A DNA stretch of 64,000 nt from the NCBI RefSeq assembly GCF_000315625.1, contig NW_005434613.1, positions 209,309 through 273,308 of the forward strand. Direction: 5' to 3'. The position numbers were made by a program, and so were the translations under genes. Positions 3,001-64,000 of the stretch are shown here, one piece after another. Origin of the DNA: Guillardia theta CCMP2712. Lineage: Eukaryota; Protista; Cryptophyta. Within the stretch, counting starts at the first letter, position 1; every line of letters begins with the position of its first letter. Under the pieces are notes generated by a model. That model worked only from the letters and a program-made list of their open reading frames with translations, did no database searches and was not told where the DNA came from.

Positions 3001-4458
3001 AAAGAAGCATCTCCCTCCTCGGCCTCGCCCTCACCCCCGTTGCTTACACGGCGACCGGACAAGCGTCTACGGCTGGTGCTCCTCACTCTCCCTCTCCCTC
3101 TGCCAGTCCTTTCCGACTACGACTACCTATTTTTACTCTCTCCTCCTCCTCCTCCTCTTCCTCTTCCTTCTCCTTCTCTCACACCTTCGATCATCCTCTC
3201 TCTCCATTTCCTTAGCCCGTATTCCACTCCCCCCCCCTTGCCTGCCTGCCTGCCTCGTGCCTCCTCCTCCTCCTCCTCCTCCTCCTCCTCCTCCTCCTCC
3301 TCCTCCTCCTCCTCCTCCTCCTGTTCAACCACATCCCCCGCCATGACCTCGATCGCAGGCCAAGTGATCCAGAAGCTCGCCGGGAAGCCTTTCGCCTCTC
3401 CTCCCTCCTACGGCACAGCGTTCAAAGACCTCGGAGGAGGAGAGGAGGGCAAGGCTGCGTGCGAGGCGCTGGCTAGCCTGCTGGAAGGGGAGGCGATCGA
3501 GAAACTGCTGAGCACCTTCCTCCTCCCACTGCCGGAGCAGACGGACGAGGCGAGCAGGATACACACTTCCCTGAACATCAACACAGAGACTGGGAGGCTG
3601 TCGTCGCAGCGCCCCAACCTGCAGAACCAGCCGGCGCTAGAGAAGGATGTGTACAGGATGAGGAAGGCGTTTTCCGCTCCTCCGGGGAGGAAGCTGATCA
3701 TAGTGGACTACGGGCAGCTGGAGCTGAGAATCATGGCACAGATGACGGGCTGCCGGAGTATGCTAGACGCGTTTGAGCAAGGAGGAGACTTTCACTCGAG
3801 GACAGCGATCGACATGTACCGCTACATCGCTGAAGCTGTGGAGAGGAAGGAGGTGCTGCTGGAGTGGAACTCGCACGACGGGGCTCCACCAGCGCCGATG
3901 CTCAAGGACAAGTTTGCGTCTGAGAGGAGGAAGGCCAAGACCCTCAACTTCGGCATCGCGTACGGGATGACGAAGATGAAGGTGGCGAGGGACTGGGGGG
4001 TGTCGCTTGAGGAGGCGGAGGAGACTATCCAGACATGGTACTCAGCACGAAAGGAGGTGAAGCAGTGGCAGGAGGAGGTGATCGAGCGAGCAAGGAGGAC
4101 CGGGTATACGGAGACGTTCCTGGGGAGGAGGAGGTACCTGCCCGAGATCAACGGCAGGGACGGGGTCGGCCGGGGGCATGCGGAGCGAGCAGCGATCAAT
4201 ACGCCGATCCAGGGAGGAGCAGCAGATATCGTGATGATGGCGATGCTGAAGCTGCGCGGGGAGGAGAGGATCAGGAGGCTGGGATGGAGGATGGTGATGC
4301 AGATTCATGACGAGATCATCCTGGAAGGGCCCGAGGAGACGGCGGAAGAAGTTTTCCCCCTGGTGCGAGCATGCATGGAGCAGCCGTTCGACTCGCCGCT
4401 GAGCGTTGAGCTGCCAGTGGATGGGAGCATAGCAGACAACTGGTATGAAGGGAAGTGA
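1..4458 (+). CDS. Organellar family-A DNA polymerase (POP / Pol I-like) with 3'-5' exonuclease; multi-exon, 5' end outside the window
   Basis: Spliced exons give ExoI FACDTETINID (~650-680), IFHNWSFDGH, HMARLWDTSR and the POP-like FGRFKLKKDGTPGK. The last exon has TETGRLSSQRPNLQNQP, motif A DYGQLELRI, motif B RRKAKTLNFGIAYG, NTPIQG and motif C QIHDE. The poly-Ser start of ORF 2914 is intronic. Confidence 0.95.
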
Positions 4459-5141
4459 GGGAGGAGGAGGAGGAGGAGGAGGAGGATGAGGGAGAAGAGA
4501 GCAGCAGCATTAACAGCAGCGGCAGAATGACGTAAAAGTTAGTGATGATCATGATGAGCCGGAGGACCCGGTGGAAGAGGTGAGGAAGAGCAGGAGAGGA
4601 GGAGGAAGAGGACGACGACGACGATTAGGAGGAGGAGGAGGATGAGGAGGATGAGGAAGAGGAGGAACGATGACAGGAAGAGCAGGAAGAAGAGGAGAGG
4701 AGTTGTCGTATAATATGTCTTCATTCACTTCACAAAGTCACGAGTAAACATCACAAACGTTAGGGGCAACGACAGATGAGACTATCTACACTTGCTGGAA
4801 AAAAATTACATGAAACGAGCTTGTCATGGTTAGTGTTGAAAACCTCCCCTGATGCGCGAACCTCGGGGTCCTCCTCCTCCTCCTCCTCCTCAGCTTCCCG
4901 CTCCTCCTTGGTCTGTTTTGACTGCCATGAGCGGCTGACAGCATCGCTCTCAGTCTTCATCCCCATCAGCACTTGACGCGTGCCGGTTATCCATCCTCCT
5001 CCTCCTCCTCCTCCTTCCAAGACGTCCGGTACCCGCTCTTGTCCAAGTTCCGGTCCCCATCCCAGTCCGCCGCGCTTCTCTTCTTCCTCCTGCTCCTCCT
5101 GCCATCATCTTGTATCCTGACCTTCGTCCACCACCTCCCCT

Positions 5142-55880: not shown

Positions 55881-57479
55881 TATCCATCTTTCCTCACCAA
55901 CACCCACTGCCTCCACTATCCCTCTTCATCCTCGTCTCTTTCAACTTCCTCAGTTCCGATGCTGAGCAGCCCTCGTGTCATCCACCATCGTCTACATTCC
56001 AGTGCTCCCCCCTTGCTTCCTCTGCCCACTTGCTTCCTTTCCGATCCGACTGCTCTTGTTCACTGCTCGCTGCACTCCTTGACCTCTTCGGTCTCCTCTC
56101 CCACATCTCGTCACTACCATGCTCTTCCATAATCGACTTCTTCTGCATTCTCCTACAATCTTTCACCCTCTCCGTATGCTTTCATGTCATCCCACTGCCC
56201 TTCTCTTTCCTTACTCCCCCCAGTCCCTCCAGATCCCCCAGTCCCCTCCTCCCTCCCCATCATCATCCTTCTCCCCATCATCCTCCCTCCTCCACCACCA
56301 CTCACCGATCGCCATGGCCACCATCGCCGCTATCATCGCTCCTTTCTCCGCCATGCTCCCCTTGCCTAAAGGGATTGCGCCTTTACTGATTTCAAAAACT
56401 GCTTATTTTAATTTGTACCGATATTCCTAATGACTAAACAGAATTTGTACTTTCATATCATTTGTAGTCCTGGGAAGCACTGGCATTATAGTACACTTTT
56501 CAGATATAATGGTACAGTAATAATTACTTATTCGACACTTATTATTGTTTTTGCTCAGTTGGTCACTCCGACTGGTTCCGGGCATCAGCCTGGCTACCTC
56601 CGTTGAAAGTACCCCACAAATCCCAGGGAAAAGTAGGGGTATATTAAAAACGGTCGTAACTGGATTCAAGTTTCATGATATGAAATTAAATTTTAGATGA
56701 ACATTTCAAATGATTCTGCTGCCTCACGGCAGGGATAGAAGCATCACTACGTCATTTAGCTGCCCCAAATTCTTAAAACCCTTTTAGAAGTATGTTTGTT
56801 GTGATTCGTACAAGATTAAAAATATCAATTTTAGTTATATATGGAGTATATATCCATTTACTTATATAACTTGTAAAGATATGCTTTTGTACAGATTTGT
56901 TATTTCAATATAGTTCCATAATAGTAAAAGCACAATACTGCCTGTGTATAGCCCTTTGGGTGCAGGTCAAATCATTTTGGTTTCAGAGTTGATTCATGTT
57001 AAAACACAATTTGAAATTATGACTTTCATTTTTGAAATATTCAAACTAAAAAGCTCGTGTGGAGGAATATAAAAATATTTTTATTGGAGGCTATTATGGG
57101 GTGATTTAACTGAACATTTATATAGAGTATCTAAATTTGGTTTTTTATGCGATCCCTTCAAAAGTATATAAAAGTGCTTATTACAATGTTGTAAACACTG
57201 GGTATGACAAAAGCTTCGGCGGCAATGGCAGGGAGGCAGAAGGAGCCGAGGAACGATGGGCATGGCGAGAAGGGATGGAGGATGAACGTCGCAAGTTGAA
57301 GATGTCACCACGTTGTAGGAGCAGGAACCAAAGAAGGAGCTGGAGCAGGAGCTGGAGCTACAAGAGCAGGAGGAGCAGGAGCAGATTTTGGAGGCACAGA
57401 GGAGTCGTAGATCAGGAGAAGCAAGGGCAGGAGTAGCGTGAGGGAAACAGTACCGTACATGGAAATGCATTGGGATTTC

Positions 57480-60400
57480 AGAAGGATACGCTTGTAAGGC
57501 AGAAGTATATGCCATGCAGTGCTGCTGTCCAGGAGCGCTTGTGGCACTGGTGGGTTTGCAAGTGCCCCCTTGTAAAGAGTCGACAATTGACAGTCTGATG
57601 AGACATGTCGATCGAAGGTGGAGGATTCCTTGCAATCTTTGCATATTGTTTTTGTTAGAGTCAAAATTATTCATCACTTCGTTGTTAGACAATCGTTCGA
57701 TCCATCCATCCATCCATCCATCCATCCATTGCTTTGGTTTCCGTGCTGCTCACTGACACTCTCTCGTGGTAGAGTGGAACACTCTGGAGATGCCTGCCGA
57801 CAAGAGCAAGCAGCATCACGCTCTTATCAACAATGTGATTCTTCCCTTTTGAACCCTGCGGTCCTTGTTTGCTAAGTGGAATTTGCTCTGTTGCAGGCGA
57901 TATTCTTTGCGGTCGCTGCTGCCATTCCTGCTGTCTTGGGAAGGAAGTTTGGTACACTCTTGAACCCTTGTTATGAACTCAGCCTGACCGATGTTGCAGA
58001 TGGACTTGCCGTCTTGCCGTTACTCTACGTGACGACGGTACGATTGCTGCGTCTGATTGAAGGATCCACTCACTTCTAATCTCTTGATATTTGTTGCTTG
58101 TGACTTTCTCCCCTGCAGTTCCGCATCCGCAAAGCGTTCCTGTACTTTGCAGCTTTTCCGCTCGTTTGCGTCGCGATTTGTGCTGTAGGTGAGAGCTCGG
58201 CATCGGTTTTGATTCCCGCAGCTGACGAACATGGACCTTCAGACAAGCGCTGGGATCTCAACAACATCAACCTCGAAGATGGATACAAGTTTGTTGCACC
58301 CATCCTCGTCTCTGTCGTGCTCCACTACGCGGGTGCTTTCATGGCATCGGACTGGAGGGTGACCTCTCGGTACAGCCCTTGACCCCTCGACCATTCGGCG
58401 ATTTACCTGGTTGAACAGTGCGGCATTAGACGAATTCTCCGAGTCGGTCTCCGGCTTCTTGGACAGAAAGTGCTACAAGGAAAAGTCTTGGCCTTCGCTC
58501 TTTTACATGAAGGCCGAAAGGGTTAGAATCCCTCGAACTGTACCCGAAGGACTCTCTTGACCCTTCCGTACCCAGGTGCTGATCTCGTTTGTGTGCATCT
58601 TGAAGATCATTCTTGCCGTCGCTTTTCTCGTCTTCTTTCTTGTTTTCAACGGGGTACGCACTCCTACGGAACTGCCCTCGGGGCTGACGTTTCCGAAGAT
58701 CCCCTCGGATGTTGTGGGATGCAGCGCTACGGATCCGAAGGCAGAATCCTATCTACGGATGTGGCTCTGGGCCTTTTATGGTACGTTGCTCCTCTCAAAA
58801 TTATCCTTAGTCGCTGAGACGCTTCGGCTACAGCGATCGTGTGCGCCACCGAGGTTATGTACCATATGGCTCTATACATGTCCAACCAGATCAGGTCCAC
58901 CTGACGATGTTTTCTTCTCCTACATCGTTGATCGTGGTGTGAAGCTGTGCTGTTCCTGGATCGTTCACCATGGCGGTGTTGCAGCCTACGTACTGGCAGG
59001 TAGATCTGGTGAACATGCCTCCTCCCTCCTCGTGACCAGGTGGTTCATAGTGGTATTTCATCGCTTCCTACGCCCCGTCCAGGGGCCTCTGGATCCCTAT
59101 CCTCACTGAATGTAATCCCTGCCTCTTGCTCGCTCGGCTGACCTCCGCGAGCAGCTCTGCGCACGTGCTCTGTGAGCTTCTTCCGCATGCAGGTCGGTGG
59201 GACGGCACGGTGTTGCCAGGGTCCTGATCTGCCTCGTTAGGACAAGGACGACGTTCTTGTCAGCCCTCTGATGTCGATGATCGAGTTCTTCCACGTGTTG
59301 CTCATGATCGCCCTTGGGGTCAGTGATCGTTACGTTTGCCTTGCGCTCCTCATCCTCTCTTGCCGCAGAAATTCTCCTCCTGCGCGTACCCGGACGCCAT
59401 GCTGTACCGCGAGCTCTTCCTCAGCTGCTTCTTCCTCTACAGCATGATCACCTTCAGGTCAGACGTCGAGCTCGTCTCCCTGCTGGGGTCGCTCGTCAGA
59501 GCTGCGGAGGTTCTGAGAGCCCATCCAGGTACAAGAAGTGGAGAACGTGGAGCAAGGCCAGGAAGCTCGTTCAAGCTCGACTCTACTTCCCAGTCCACCA
59601 CAAGGAGATCGAGTGCTACGTTCGCAAGTGGCAGAAAGGGATCAACCTGCCCGATGGAGGAGGCGACGTGGAGTTTCCCGAGGATCATCCTGCATGGAAG
59701 AAGTCCCATGGAAAGCCGAATGTTAAGTAGGACTTGCCTACTCAGACTTCTGTTGCTGACTCTTACTCCTCTCTCTACCTTGTTCTCTTCCTCTATCCTA
59801 TCCTATCCCTCCCTCTCCTTCTCTGTCCTTCTTCTTTCTCCCTCTCCCCCTCCCCTTTGCTCTCCTCAGGTATTTCCCTGAGCTATCAATCTCCCGCAAA
59901 GAGTCTCGCCCAGACTGGGGAAGTGAAGTGCCGAAGTTTGTGACCTTCGAGGTGACCAGCCCAGACAACTCATGACAGCCTCACCTCCTCCTTTATCTCC
60001 TCCTCCTTCATTTGCCACCACCACCACCACCACCACCTCATCCTCCTCCTCCTCCTTCTACTCCTCCTGCTTCGTCTCCTCTCTTCATCCCAAAGTTCAC
60101 CCTTAAAAACCTCGTTCCTACTATCCTCGACTCAAACGCCTCTGACAAGCCCCCCTTCTTCAGAGGAAGACTCAGATGCCTGGAGAGTGGATCTGCGTCG
60201 AGATCGGGACCGACGCTGGGGTCCTGCTGGATGAAAACGAGATGGACACTGGTCTCAAGGGTCAGTTCCGCGTTTTGCATCCTCTGGTCGACTCCAAGGG
60301 TGTGCTCGCCTACTGGGGAGACTTCGGGCCAGGCAAGCTGTTTGCGGCGAAGAGATACAAGAAGGATCCGGCGGGGGGATGGGACATGACAGTCCCCGGA

Positions 60401-62228
60401 GACGATGCGACGGAGGCGGAGCTCAGTGCAGCCAGGAATCGCCATGTTCGCCTCCTCAAGCCATACTTTCAGGACTGCCTGATGCAGGAGAAGGCGGCGG
60501 AGTTCGGTAGGGCCTTCAATAAGGTCGAAAACCTCCCGGTCCGCAAAGTCGAGCTGCTGCGAGCATGCGTGCTTGAGATGGAGTGGGACAGTGCCCTGCC
60601 GCANNNNNNNNNNNNNNNNNNNNNNNNNNNNNNNNNNNNNNNNNNNNNNNNNNNNNNNNNNNNNNNNNNNNNNNNNNNNNNNNNNNNNNNNNNNNNNNNN
60701 NNNNNNNNNNNNNNNNNNNNNNNNNNNNNNNNNNNNNNNNNNNNNNNNNNNNNNNNNNNNNNNNNNNNNNNNNNNNNNNNNNNNNNNNNNNNNNNNNNNN
60801 NNNNNNNNNNNNNNNNNNNNNNNNNNNNNNNNNNNNNNNNNNNNNNNNNNNNNNNNNNNNNNNNNNNNNNNNNNNNNNNNNNNNNNNNNNNNNNNNNNNN
60901 NNNNNNNNNNNNNNNNNNNNNNNNNNNNNNNNNNNNNNNNNNNNNNNNNNNNNNNNNNNNNNNNNNNNNNNNNNNNNNNNNNNNNNNNNNNTCATCATCA
61001 TTATCAATCTCCTCCTTGTCCTCTCCATCCACTCTTCCACCTCCTCCGTCCTTCCCCCCCCCCCCCTTCCCTCCTCCTCCTCCTCGGCCTCCTCTCCACG
61101 GAGACTGACCTTCTGCCGCAGTTCAACAACAATGAGTACGTTCCTGGGCAGCAGGCGGTGCAGAACACTCCCAACATGCTCTCCCTCTTCAGGTCCGCAG
61201 GAGGAAGGAGGGGACACCGACGAGCGGGGGAAGAGGAGGAGGAGGAAGCTAACGCTGCCCACAGCTACTTCCATTCCGATCGCCAGCTGCTCCTCTGTGA
61301 TGTGCAGGGCAAGAAGTACAAGTTTACAGACCCTCAGTTCCACTCGTCCGAGAAAGACTCGGCCGAGGATGACGACTACGAGGAGGCAAGTCTCCTCCTG
61401 CTTTGCCTACTCCCTAGCACTTTCCCAGCTGCTCTGCACCCCTCTCCCTCCTCCTGCTCTCCTACAACTCCTGCTCTCCTGCAACTCCTGTCTTCCTGTA
61501 TTATCTCCCTCTTCTTCCTGTCTATCCCTCTCCTCCTACCTCCCTCCCCCCCCCTTCTCCCTCTCTTCCCCTCGCCGTCTTGTCTCCTCACTCGGGTTCC
61601 AGGGCGAGCTTCGTGACTGGCTGCACTCGGACGGAGGTATCGAGATGATGAAGCGAGTAAGAGGCTCTCAGTTTGCGCCCCTTCTTTTCTGACTCAGCTG
61701 GAGGTTCTGGTGGGCCTGCACGAGCAGAAGTCCCTGCACGCGCTGTGTAACCGCGTCTGGCCGGAGAAGATGAGAGAGTTCAACAAGGAGGTGAGGAGCT
61801 GGAGCTGGAGCTGGAGAGGGGAGGAGGAGCAGAGGGGAGGAGGAACAGGGAGGGGGAGACGATGCTGACCGTTGAATAGGTTGAGCAGTGGAAGGAGGAT
61901 CCAGAGTTTAAGAAACTGGTGAGAAAGGAGGAGAGGAAAGGAGGGGAGCGGGGAAGAGGGGAAACGAGAGACTGGCCGTGACATTGACGTTCATCGGGCA
62001 GCTGGAGCAGTGGGAGAAGGAGGCGAGGCTGTACCGCAAGTACTTCGCCAACCTCAACCCTGTGCTGGACGCGGGTGTGGGCGGCATGGCAGGTGGAGTG
62101 GAGCTGGGAGGGAATTTGCGGGGTTTGACAGGGTGGCAGACATGGAGGAGGAGCTGGACGAGGCGATGAAGTCAAGCCTGATGTCTGTGCCTACTAGTCA
62201 GGCCCGTAGTGGATCCGTCCAGCGATGA
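57480..62228 (+). CDS. Multi-pass membrane protein fused to a C-terminal alpha-kinase (eEF2K/MHCK family); multi-exon, spans a gap
   Basis: Kinase motifs G.FR, FAAKRYK, YFQDCLMQEKAAEFGRAFN, FNNN, LLLCDVQG, FTDPQFHS. Upstream hydrophobic exons join in frame via exons 59529-59726, 59870-59951 and 60164 onward. Ends are approximate. Confidence 0.78.
60604..60991. other. Assembly gap
   Basis: Run of N inside the kinase gene. Confidence 1.
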
Positions 62229-64000
62229 AGTGCTGTGAGCAGGAGGAGGGAGATGGGAGGGGAGGAGTGGAGAGGAGCGAATAGAGGAGGAGGAGGAGGA
62301 GGAGGAGGAGGAGGGAGGAGGAGGAGGAGGAGGAAGTGGTGGTGGTGGTGGGCGGCACCATGAAGGGGATGACCAGTTGTCGAGCTCTGCTCTCCGAGAC
62401 GTATGCTGAGGCCTTTGGACCATCCTGCAAGAGCAGAGGAGGAGAGAAGAAGAAAAGGACGAAAAGGAGGAGGGGAAAGTTAAGAGGAGAACAAAAAGAT
62501 GAGAAGAGGGGAAGATGGAGAGGGAGGAGTGGGGGAGAGAAAGAAGGAGATCGTAAGGTTTTGAAGATGTTGAAAGAAGTTCAAACCTTGAGGTCCAATA
62601 GTTTCACGTCTGATCGCTTGCTGGGGTCAAAAGCTCCTTGTCCTGTTGTACTGATTTCATTCGTCTCACCCTCATACATAACTAAGGTCGAGAGGAGATG
62701 ATGAGATGAGATGAGATGAGATGAGATGAGATGAGATGAGATGAGATGAGATGAGATGAGATGAGATGAGATGAGATGAGATGAGATGAGATGAGATGAT
62801 GAAAAGACAGGCAAGACAAGACAAGTTGAGAAATGCTTCTGGAGGATAAGCAGGATATACGATAAGATCAAGGAAGATTGTAAGATAAGGTTGTAAGATA
62901 AGGTTGTAAGATAAGGTTGTAAGATAAGGTTGTAAGATAAGGTTGTAAGATAAGGTTGTAAGATAAGTCATGCTCTGTGTCGTCACCGTAAAGGTCCATC
63001 GTCTGCTTCTTCGTCTTGCCGACAAGTTTCATCAGCTGAGAACAAAGTCAGATGCACAACCGCTGAAGAACAAGCTAACGCAACGACGACAAGAACTAAT
63101 GAAAGCAAGAATGAAGGCAAGACTAGACAACACTAGACAAGACAAGACAAGAATAGACAAGACAAGAAAAGACAAGATAAGACAAGAAAAGAAAAGAAAA
63201 GACAAGACAAGACAGGACAGGACAAGAATCAGAAAATGAGCGGAAGAACGAAGTGTCTGCTTGATGAACCTGACTCAAGTTCAACCAGATGGTTCCCTTG
63301 TCATCGATGTGAATCGCAGCTTTCAACCCGCAGACCTTGTAGGCTCGCAGTCAGAACAAGAGCAGCAGCATGGATTGCGAAGCACATGAAAAGAAACAGA
63401 GATGGAGACAAATCAAATGTCGACATGTCGGAGATGAAAAAGCTCACAGGCAACAAGGAATTGGACAGAACATGAGGAAAACAAAGAAAATAAGGAGAGA
63501 GAAAGGAGGAAAGATAGTCAGCCAAAGGAAGAAATAACACAGGTCGCAACGACTAGATCACAAGAAATGTCGTTAACAAACAATGTCAACCAGAAGGCAA
63601 CAACATGGAATAACAAACAACATGGAATAACAACATAGAATAACAAACAACGTCGAATGACAACATGGAAAGACAACACAATGAAATGACGACAACAAGG
63701 AATGACATCAACAATTAAGATCATCAACAACTTACACGGACATAGAGAGGTCTGCTCATGTCATAATGTGATGGGCAGAAATGCCACGAGCAGCAGTCTT
63801 CTCTCGTGGGATTGTGACCCACACCCTTCCATCCAGCGTCAGGGATCCTCCTCCTCCTCCCTCCTCCCTCCTCCTCCTCCTCCTCCTCCTCCTTCCCTTC
63901 CCCCATACTTTACCCTCTCCTCCTTCATTATCATCCTACTTTGCTCCCTCCCTCCCTACATTTCGAGTCCTCTTGCCATCTTTCCTTCCTCTCCTCTCCT
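62194..64000 (-). CDS. 3' part of an unidentified multi-exon gene
   Basis: Short exons such as KAAIHIDDKGTIWLNLSQ and VMYEGETNEISTTGQGAFDPSKRSDVKLLDLK between microsatellite-filled introns. Confidence 0.4.
62696..62797 (+). repeat. (ATGAG)n microsatellite
   Basis: About 20 tandem units. Confidence 0.95.
62878..62967 (+). repeat. 13-bp minisatellite (GGTTGTAAGATAA)n
   Basis: About 6-7 tandem units. Confidence 0.95.

What the first reader, a model, noticed from the sequence alone, without database searches (positions are those of the whole stretch)
57480..62228. Polytopic membrane domain spliced in frame to an alpha-kinase (receptor- or chanzyme-like)
Seen: hand-spliced exons from ~57790 give roughly 8 hydrophobic segments (AIFFAVAAAIPAVL, AFLYFAAFPLVCVAICAV, FVAPILVSVVLHYA, VLISFVCILKIILAVAFLVFFLVF, MWLWAFYAIVC, FFHVLLMIALG, LFLSCFFLYSMITF). 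Introns 59727-59869 and 59952-60163 keep phase into the kinase ORF and remove the TAG at 59728-59730. Known: the characterised membrane-integral alpha-kinases are the TRPM6/7 channel-kinases. I see no TRP or pore motif here. Inference: an independent membrane sensor-alpha-kinase fusion.
Basis: partly seen in the sequence, partly recalled or inferred. Interest (0 to 1): 0.72.

Follow-up and report, generated by a model that had tools for sequence, protein, structure and literature searches.

The report
Membrane barrel fused to alpha-kinase
A cryptophyte alga makes one spliced transcript that joins a ten-helix membrane domain, whose predicted fold resembles fatty-acyl-CoA-handling barrels, to an atypical (alpha-type) protein kinase. 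The layout is kept in every full-length relative I found, and I found no paper that describes it.

Summary
Spliced transcript contigs from two runs cross every intron from ATG 57790 to TGA 62228, including the two introns that remove TAG 59728-59730. They give a 24-exon, 2301-nt CDS of 766 aa. The first 420 residues hold about ten membrane helices and a conserved linker; the rest is an alpha-kinase (Pfam PF02816).

The N gap hides 49 nt, which complete 17 codons. Contig arithmetic keeps the frame, and orthologs carry exactly 17 residues at that point.

The genome is Guillardia theta CCMP2712. GenBank already fuses both halves in XP_005828226.1 ('hypothetical protein'), but that model misses the catalytic DxQG exon and so misses Pfam.

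All nine other full-length relatives (629-784 aa) carry the same fusion; the named ones are Hemiselmis and Geminigera. No stand-alone membrane domain was found.

The membrane domain has no Pfam match and no TRP or pore feature. Two AlphaFold models both match ELOVL7 best (Z 11.6 and 12.2), then TMEM120A and ceramide synthases. These share the six-helix acyl-CoA barrel, but the double-histidine motif is absent here.

The fusion is independent of TRPM6/7. A sensor role is plausible and untested. I found no paper on it.

The parts
57790..57834 (+). Exon 1 with the start codon ATG 57790 (MPADKSKQHHALINN)
   Evidence: The orthologs' N-termini align from this point. The extra N-terminus 'MSIEEWNTLE' in the GenBank model is not supported by the X1 contig, which is colinear across 57400-57834.
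57897..59457 (+). Exons 2-14, encoding the ten-helix membrane domain (residues 16-327): 57897-57951, 58000-58037, 58119-58188, 58243-58369, 58419-58521, 58576-58653, 58699-58780, 58834-58894, 58945-58999, 59051-59111, 59155-59192, 59241-59318, 59369-59457
   Evidence: GT..AG joints in the X1 and X2 contigs, refined. The frame is open. No Pfam hit. Models of orthologs match ELOVL7, TMEM120A and CerS best.
59529..59726 (+). Exon 15: conserved cytosolic linker (YKKWRTW...HHKEIECYVRKW...)
   Evidence: Contig piece 59526-59726. Single copy in its own genome. Residues R353, P357, H360 and W370 are invariant in the family.
59727..59869 (+). Intron 15 (GT..AG, 143 nt), which holds TAG 59728-59730
   Evidence: Absent from the X1 and X2 transcript contigs by record arithmetic. 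Splice sites. Present in the DNA contig of X13, which is colinear across 57400-60006.
59870..59951 (+). Exon 16: 82-nt mini-exon (YFPELSISRKESRPDWGSEVPKFVTFE)
   Evidence: The 80 letters between contig pieces plus 2 ambiguous letters. Homologous residues are present in P0002, P0003, P0013 and P0026.
59952..60163 (+). Intron 16 (GT..AG, 212 nt)
60164..60603 (+). Exon 17: start of the alpha-kinase (residues 421-566), running into the assembly gap. It holds the presumed ATP-binding lysine in FAAKRYKKDP.
   Evidence: Pfam PF02816, E 0.0033, profile positions 36-82. Contig piece 60162-60603. 97% identical to P0001 and 68-71% to P0002 and P0003.
60604..60991 (.). Assembly gap (N). It hides 49 nt of exon 17, which complete 17 codons, and the start of the next intron.
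   Evidence: Record arithmetic. Orthologs have 17 residues here.
61122..61192 (+). Exon 18 (FNNNEYVPGQQAVQNTPNMLSLF)
   Evidence: Invariant FNNN..QNTPN block in the family.
61265..61385 (+). Exon 19: catalytic core (YFHSDRQLLLCDVQGKKYKFTDPQFHS), followed by a GC..AG intron at 61386-61602
   Evidence: Pfam PF02816, E 1.5e-9, 38.6 bits, profile positions 126-166. Contig piece 61262-61383. This exon is missing from the GenBank model P0001.
61603..62228 (+). Exons 20-24: C-lobe and tail of the kinase: 61603-61656, 61698-61790, 61886-61918 (or 61704-61790 with 61880-61918), 62002-62092, 62140-62228, ending in TGA 62226-62228
   Evidence: Contig pieces 62001-62086 and 62134-62245 plus the length constraint of 271 nt. 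One pair of acceptor sites is left undecided.

Best explanation
Shown: 57790-62228 is one Guillardia theta gene (GUITHDRAFT_142162) of 24 exons. It encodes a protein of about 766 aa made of three parts:
- an N-terminal domain of about ten membrane helices, with both ends on the cytosolic side by the positive-inside rule;
- a conserved cytosolic linker of about 95 aa;
- a C-terminal alpha-kinase that keeps the lysine, DxQG and TDP catalytic motifs.
The family is found only in cryptophytes so far, and every full-length member is fused.

Inferred from structure prediction: the last seven helices form an ELOVL-type barrel. This is the six-helix acyl-CoA barrel shared by ELOVL elongases, TMEM120A/B and ceramide synthases. 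Three extra helices precede it, and the catalytic double histidine of those enzymes is absent.

Proposed mechanism, not tested: the barrel sits in an ER-type membrane and holds a CoA, acyl-CoA or lipid ligand in a cavity open to the cytosol. Occupancy or conformation is passed through the conserved linker to the kinase. The kinase then phosphorylates cytosolic or membrane-proximal substrates. That would make the protein a metabolite- or lipid-coupled membrane kinase rather than a channel-kinase.

My odds: single fused gene 0.95; ELOVL-class fold 0.6; ligand-coupled regulation 0.25.
For: - Spliced contigs from two runs span all junctions and the gap. The frame is open and the CDS is 2301 nt.
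- Pfam Alpha_kinase hits on window exons and at E 1e-24 to 1e-28 in orthologs. The nearest solved relatives are MHCK A and eEF2K, with DIQG and TDPQ aligned.
- Ten proteins of 629-784 aa match the membrane and linker region. All carry PF02816 except the faulty GenBank model. Complete MMETSP transcript ORFs are among them.
- Metagenome contig L003 has the membrane domain as one intronless 332-aa ORF, followed in order by the linker pieces and the kinase ORF.
- Two independent AF2 models (pLDDT 71.7 and 79.8) both rank ELOVL7 first: Z 11.6 and 12.2, with 219 and 216 of 256 residues aligned. TMEM120A (Z 9.2), CerS6 (7.3) and yeast ceramide synthases (6.1-7.2) follow. Foldseek also ranks ELOVL7 first.
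- PMC11919693 states that CerS6, ELOVL7, TMEM120A/B and HACD share a six-TM barrel suited to acyl-CoA.
- Loop charges fit ten helices with N and C termini inside.
- Invariant polar residues lie in or near helices: K153, E155, R156, E215, H219, Y245-W248. The linker is strongly conserved.
Against: - The fold match is not statistically secure. Foldseek E-values are only 0.05-0.12. The VIA tool warns that helical bundles can reach Z of about 13 by arrangement alone.
- There is no sequence-level link to ELO, TMPIT or TLC families.
- No conserved HH or HxxHH motif.
- The models rest on shallow alignments of 12-14 sequences.
- I could not obtain a residue-level superposition, so I do not know whether the conserved residues line a cavity.
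- No ligand, localisation or kinase activity has been measured.
- The zinc-binding module of the kinase looks altered (LHxLCxRxWP).
- Only 3 raw reads of the one true RNA-seq run (X17) fell on the locus, so expression may be low.
Confidence: 0.6

Rival explanations
1. Passive anchor. The membrane domain only tethers the alpha-kinase to a particular membrane, such as the ER or the outer plastid-ER membrane. It brings the kinase near its substrates and senses no ligand.
For: No ligand-binding or catalytic motif could be identified. Many alpha-kinases in this genome are fused to assorted targeting modules (earlier unchecked notes).
Against: Ten helices carry many invariant polar residues (E215, H219, YWQWY, RMQDKxD), and the linker is strongly conserved. 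That is far more constraint than an anchor needs. The domain is never replaced or lost in any full-length relative.
Confidence: 0.25
2. Membrane enzyme plus kinase. The barrel is itself an acyl-CoA-using or lipid-modifying enzyme with a non-canonical active site (for example H107, E215, H219). The kinase regulates it, or is regulated by it, in cis.
For: The three best-matching fold families include two acyl-CoA enzyme families (PMC11919693). Invariant His and Glu sit in helices.
Against: The double histidine used by both ELOVL and CerS is absent. There is no sequence similarity to any enzyme family. TMEM120A shows that the fold can exist as a plain CoA binder.
Confidence: 0.12
3. Channel-kinase. 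The membrane domain conducts ions and the kinase is coupled to it, as in TRPM6/7.
For: The only characterised membrane-integral alpha-kinases are channels (PMC2827801). TMEM120A was once proposed to be a channel (PMC8376247).
Against: No TRP, ion-transport or pore motif. No channel appears in the top 50 structural matches. Channel activity of TMEM120A was not reproduced (PMC8376246, abstract).
Confidence: 0.03
4. Two neighbouring genes, a membrane protein and a kinase, wrongly joined by read-through or by contig assembly.
For: Logan contigs cannot prove a single molecule over their whole length. TAG 59728-59730 would end the frame if intron 15 were retained.
Against: The junction introns are removed in contigs of two runs. 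Complete single ORFs of 629-784 aa from independent transcriptomes of other cryptophytes carry both halves. The residues encoded across the junction are conserved.
Confidence: 0.02

Closest known systems
TRPM6/TRPM7 channel-kinases (animals)
   Same: A polytopic membrane domain at the N-terminus and a cytosolic alpha-kinase at the C-terminus of one polypeptide.
   Different: TRPM6/7 have a six-helix tetrameric cation channel with a TRP box and a large cytosolic N-terminus. Here there are ten helices, no TRP or pore feature and an ELOVL-like predicted barrel. The kinase is closer to MHCK A and eEF2K in the solved-structure search. The fusion arose independently.
ELOVL fatty-acid elongases (ELOVL7, PDB 6Y7F)
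   Same: Best structural match to both models: Z 11.6 and 12.2, about 217 of 256 residues aligned. Seven helices, and both the match and the query end in the cytosol.
   Different: No Pfam ELO match, no HxxHH histidine box, three extra N-terminal helices, an amphipathic helix inserted after the first barrel helix, and a kinase attached.
TMEM120A/B (TACAN), a CoA-binding membrane protein
   Same: Second-best structural match (Z 9.2) over the six-helix barrel. It is an example of this fold used as a CoA binder without known catalysis (PMC8376247).
   Different: TMEM120 has an N-terminal coiled-coil dimerisation domain and no kinase. No sequence similarity.
Ceramide synthases / TLC domain (CerS6 8QZ6, yeast Lac1 8IZD)
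   Same: The same six-helix barrel class (Z 6.1-7.3).
   Different: No Lag1p double-histidine motif and no Pfam TLC hit.
Dictyostelium MHCK A and eEF2 kinase (soluble alpha-kinases)
   Same: Nearest solved kinase domains (E about 1e-9). The DxQG and TDPQxH motifs are conserved.
   Different: They are soluble, with WD-repeat, coiled-coil or calmodulin-binding regulatory parts instead of a membrane domain.

Membership tests
Alpha-kinase (Pfam PF02816) | Profile match above the curated cut-off of 21.3 bits | tested here: met
   Window exon 61119-61391 scores 38.6 bits. Orthologs score 87-100 bits.
Alpha-kinase (Pfam PF02816) | Catalytic residues: ATP-binding Lys, the Asp and Gln of DxQG, and the Asp of TDP | tested here: met
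   The window encodes FAAKRY, CDVQG and FTDPQFHS. They align to DIQG and TDPQIH of MHCK A via ortholog P0003. K487 is invariant, and DIQG and TDP are at least 90% conserved.
Alpha-kinase (Pfam PF02816) | C-terminal zinc-binding His/Cys module (H...HxCNxxC) | tested here: inconclusive
   The family has a conserved LHxLCxRxWP. One His and one Cys are clear, and the second Cys was not found. The comparison with the canonical motif rests on my memory of it.
Alpha-kinase (Pfam PF02816) | Phosphotransferase activity | not testable with these tools
   Needs an in vitro kinase assay.
TRPM6/7 channel-kinase | TRPM channel domain (six helices, pore loop, TRP box) | tested here: not met
   No Pfam ion-channel or TRP hit in the window pieces or the orthologs, even at E up to 10. 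No channel among the top structural matches.
ELO elongase (Pfam PF01151) | Sequence profile match | tested here: not met
   No hit at E up to 10 in any of 12 members.
ELO elongase (Pfam PF01151) | HxxHH histidine box | tested here: not met
   No HxxHH in any of 11 sequences, and no conserved HH.
ELO elongase (Pfam PF01151) | Seven-helix fold with a six-helix barrel | tested here: inconclusive
   ELOVL7 is the top match in both models and with both aligners (Z 11.6 and 12.2). The Foldseek E-values of 0.05-0.12 and the tool's warning about helical bundles keep this short of proof.
TMEM120 (TMPIT) | N-terminal coiled-coil followed by a six-helix CoA-binding barrel | tested here: not met
   The barrel matches at Z 9.2. 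There is no coiled-coil: the N-terminus is three membrane helices. No Pfam hit. CoA binding cannot be tested here.
Ceramide synthase / TLC domain | Lag1p motif with a double histidine | tested here: not met
   No conserved HH. No Pfam TLC hit. Fold match only Z 6.1-7.3.

The most novel reading that the evidence does not exclude
A cryptophyte-specific receptor-like kinase of a new kind. An ELOVL/TMEM120-type membrane barrel binds CoA, an acyl-CoA or another lipid, and switches a covalently attached alpha-kinase through a conserved linker. That would link membrane lipid or acyl-CoA status directly to protein phosphorylation. It would be the second known polytopic alpha-kinase architecture, evolved independently of TRPM6/7, and the first signalling use of this barrel fold.
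Probability: 0.25. Interest if true: 0.8.

Novelty: new variant of a known kind. Interest (0 to 1): 0.6.

Why it matters
Alpha-kinases built into the membrane are known only as the animal TRPM6/7 channel-kinases. This family shows that the kinase was fused to a polytopic membrane domain a second time, in a different eukaryotic lineage and with an unrelated fold.

If the ELOVL/TMEM120-like assignment holds, it gives a testable idea for the function of this barrel outside acyl-CoA enzymes, namely coupling lipid or CoA status to phosphorylation. It also gives a handle on the unexplored signalling of cryptophyte algae.

On the practical side, the reference gene model XP_005828226.1 needs correction. 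It loses the catalytic exon and is therefore not recognised as a kinase.

Tried and rejected
- **Pfam on single exons of the membrane part and on whole orthologs.** Nothing except chance NPCC or DUF hits.
- **Own-genome search with a membrane exon and the linker exon.** Self hits only, so the gene is single copy and has no paralogs to compare.
- **Word search with P0003:1-420.** It timed out. Shorter queries and a profile found only the same cryptophyte clade.
- **ESM Atlas by features and by shape.** No usable match, TM below 0.35.
- **Foldseek against PDB.** No hit at E below 1e-3.
- **First exon-chain script.** I replaced it with a constrained enumeration.
- **Choice between acceptor pairs 61698/61886 and 61704/61880.** It could not be settled from the tables.
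- **Joint 61249 to 61925 (TA..GA, depth 6051).** I take it as an artefact of GGAGGA-type low-complexity contigs, not a splice.
- **Raw RNA-seq run X17.** Only 3 reads, so it gave no start, end or strand information.
- **Joined exon model.** Searches used single exons by reference or database proteins (P0001-P0077). The joined translation was used only inside scripts, to check frame and hydropathy.
- **Literature.** Searches for alpha-kinase with Guillardia, cryptophyte or algal kinomes found nothing relevant.
Full report
**1. What is in the sequence**

Pfam confirms the kinase on single exons. Window 61119-61391 scores 38.6 bits against PF02816 (E 1.5e-9, profile 126-166). Window 60176-60601 gives a sub-threshold match to profile positions 36-82. 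The membrane-side pieces hit nothing.

**2. Transcript evidence**

The look-up of sequencing runs found eleven runs that hold about 43-45% of the words of 57700-60600, as expected for spliced RNA. Four runs hold 70-80%, as expected for DNA.

I laid four runs on 57400-62400. One contig in X1 (2868 nt) and one in X2 (2339 nt) lack fourteen GT..AG introns of 43-81 nt between 57835 and 59528. Each then continues 59526-59726, then 80 letters, then 60162-60603, then 61262-61383, and (in X2) 62001-62086 and 62134-62245. The 80 letters plus two ambiguous ones equal the 82-nt mini-exon 59870-59951.

The DNA-type run X13 gives a contig colinear with the genome over 57400-60006, which shows that the spliced contigs are cDNA.

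Splice sites were refined. The joined frame from ATG 57790 to 60603 is open: 17 exons, 1700 nt, no stop.

**3. The assembly gap (tested first, as asked)**

The contig has 117 letters between genome positions 60603 and 61262. After allowing for exon 61122-61192 and three ambiguous letters, 49 nt of exon lie inside the N run. 440 + 49 = 489 nt = 163 codons, so exon 61122 starts in phase 0 and the frame is kept.

There is an independent check. Orthologs P0002 and P0003 have exactly 17 residues (QLYLCEPFLDEKTPFRK and QLYLCEQFLDDSVPFRK) between '...LP' and 'FNNN'. The letters themselves remain unread in this assembly.

Downstream exons are 61122-61192, 61265-61385 (followed by a GC..AG intron), 61603-61656, 61698-61790, 61886-61918, 62002-62092 and 62140-62228 with TGA. 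One pair of acceptors is undecided: 61698/61886 or 61704/61880.

The total CDS is 2301 nt, or 766 aa. This matches an independent estimate from the X2 record coordinates.

**4. Identity of the gene and the public model**

The window is contig C61 of an 87.1-Mb, 669-contig assembly.

I searched 1.84 billion representatives with the kinase exon. The word search could not do this job, because candidates are limited to 0.55-1.75 times the query length and no stop-free reference is long enough to reach a 766-aa protein. The search returned only 23 hits.

The best hit, P0001, is EKX41246.1 / XP_005828226.1, 'hypothetical protein GUITHDRAFT_142162 [Guillardia theta CCMP2712]'. That model already joins the membrane part to the kinase, but it differs from the RNA in five ways:
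- It adds an unsupported upstream exon (MSIEEWNTLE).
- It uses an acceptor 24 nt too early at 58219.
- It keeps the 45-nt intron 58654-58698.
- It skips the gap.
- It loses the catalytic exon 61265-61385 and mis-splices 61603-61656.

As a result it has no Pfam Alpha_kinase hit and no informative name.

**5. Conservation of the fusion**

P0003 (784 aa) is a complete MMETSP transcript ORF from Hemiselmis andersenii (UniRef A0A7S1DXX6). P0002 (653 aa) comes from many metagenome or metatranscriptome contigs. Both have the membrane region, the linker and a full Alpha_kinase domain at E 1e-24 to 1e-26.

A region-restricted search with the whole of P0003 found ten proteins of 629-784 aa that match the membrane and linker part. 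Every one carries PF02816 except the faulty P0001. Named sources are Guillardia, Hemiselmis and Geminigera. A partial record comes from Baffinella. All four are cryptophytes.

Shorter hits are fragments cut at introns or contig ends. In metagenome contig L003 the membrane domain is one intronless 332-aa ORF (4088-5086). It is followed on the same strand, in order, by the linker pieces and the 360-aa kinase ORF.

I found no stand-alone version of the membrane domain. I also found no paralog in the Guillardia genome.

The full-length alignment shows strong conservation in all three parts (58% mean column identity), including the linker.

**6. What the membrane domain is**

There is no Pfam family, even at E up to 10, in 12 members. 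The ESM Atlas gives nothing by features or by shape.

I made two AlphaFold2 models from shallow family alignments:
- P0003:1-425, pLDDT 71.7, pTM 0.66.
- P0024:1-326, pLDDT 79.8, pTM 0.79.

Both show about ten membrane helices plus one amphipathic cytosolic helix.

An exhaustive VIA-align search of 48,161 PDB representatives puts the same families on top for both models:

| Match | Z, model 1 | Z, model 2 |
|---|---|---|
| ELOVL7 (6Y7F) | 11.6 (219 of 256 aligned) | 12.2 (216 of 256 aligned) |
| TMEM120A | 9.2 | 9.2 |
| CerS6 | 7.3 | 7.3 |
| Yeast ceramide synthases | 6.1 and 6.4 | 6.8 and 7.2 |

No GPCR, channel or transporter comes near. Foldseek also ranks ELOVL7 first, but at E 0.12 and 0.05.

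[quoted passage not shown] TMEM120A is a CoA-binding protein with the ELOVL fold (PMC8376247).

Loop charges fit ten helices with N and C termini in the cytosol. Helices 4-10 then have the orientation of ELOVL TM1-7: lumen to cytosol first, with the C-terminus cytosolic. This mapping is my inference by helix count.

The catalytic double histidine of ELOVL and CerS is absent, with no conserved HH or HxxHH. Invariant polar residues do exist in or near helices: K153, E155, R156, E215, H219, the P-T-Y-W-Q-W-Y helix, and RMQDKxD.

I therefore describe the domain as 'ELOVL/TMEM120-class barrel by predicted fold, not a member of any of those sequence families', at about 0.6 confidence. The tool itself warns that helical bundles can reach Z of about 13 without common ancestry.

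**7. The kinase**

The nearest solved structures are Dictyostelium MHCK A (3LKM) and eEF2K (7SHQ), at E about 1e-9, with DIQG and TDPQxH aligned.

The window encodes FAAKRYKKDP, CDVQG and FTDPQFHS, so the catalytic set looks intact. The zinc module looks altered (LHxLCxRxWP), and I could not judge that further.

**8. How it probably works**

Shown: one polypeptide, with a membrane domain, a conserved linker and an apparently active alpha-kinase that faces the cytosol.

Inferred: the barrel binds a CoA, acyl-CoA or lipid-like ligand, and the linker passes its state to the kinase.

Rivals:
- a mere membrane anchor (0.25);
- a non-canonical membrane enzyme with an attached kinase (0.12);
- a channel-kinase (0.03);
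- an artefact of two genes (0.02).

**9. Comparison with what is known, and novelty**

The only characterised membrane-integral alpha-kinases are TRPM6/7 (PMC2827801). This family shares the layout but not the membrane fold, and it arose independently.

I found no paper on it. The proteins do sit in public databases, unnamed or named only for the kinase. I rate it a new variant of a known kind, at moderate interest.

Earlier notes of this scan list other alpha-kinase fusions in the same genome. They suggest that this kinase has been combined with many partners in Guillardia. I did not check those notes myself.

**10. Limits**

- Folds are of orthologs, not of the Guillardia protein itself.
- Logan contigs cannot give transcript ends, strand or abundance.
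- The one raw RNA-seq run gave three reads.

Noticed in passing
window 57606-57770, 58189-58242, 58654-58698, 61265-61656: The GenBank model XP_005828226.1 (P0001) differs from the RNA contigs. It has an extra 5' exon with intron 57618-57770 that is not removed in the X1 contig. It uses an acceptor 24 nt early at 58219. It retains the 45-nt in-frame intron 58654-58698. It drops the catalytic exon 61265-61385 and mis-splices 61603-61656. Because of this the reference protein has no Alpha_kinase annotation.
   Followed up: yes
window 57400-57789 (and at least 192 nt further upstream): The X1 contig is colinear with the genome for at least 580 nt upstream of ATG 57790. This stretch holds upstream ATGs, for example an 80-codon ORF at 57514-57756 and ATG 57606. 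It could be a long uORF-bearing leader or a contig merged with a neighbouring or antisense transcript. The X2 contig starts only about 22 nt before the ATG.
   Followed up: no
window 61386-61602: A GC..AG intron with donor GCAAGT, inferred from the joint position and length arithmetic. All sixteen introns refined before the assembly gap are GT..AG.
   Followed up: partly
cluster of P0002: Two NCBI records labelled 'MAG: Promethearchaeia archaeon' (MGB1596023.1, 516 aa; MGB1596024.1, 84 aa) belong to the 90% cluster of this cryptophyte membrane alpha-kinase. They are almost certainly eukaryotic (cryptophyte) contigs mis-binned into an Asgard archaeon MAG.
   Followed up: no
L003:4088-7083: In an uncultured relative (ENA contig of 113 kb) the whole 332-aa membrane domain is one intronless ORF. 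Guillardia splits the same region with 13-14 introns of 43-81 nt. This is a large difference in intron density between cryptophyte lineages for one gene.
   Followed up: partly
window 62697-62800 and 62880-62965: Just downstream of the stop codon there is a (GATGA)n microsatellite of about 100 nt and a 13-nt tandem repeat (GTTGTAAGATAAG)n. Further on, at 63120-63230, there are (GACAA/GAAAA)-type repeats.
   Followed up: no
window 61249-61925: read laying lists a joint 61249 to 61925 (TA..GA, depth about 6000) and many loose ends in GGAGGA-rich stretches. These look like unrelated, highly expressed low-complexity contigs landing on purine-rich intron and exon sequence, not like a splice of this gene.
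   Followed up: partly
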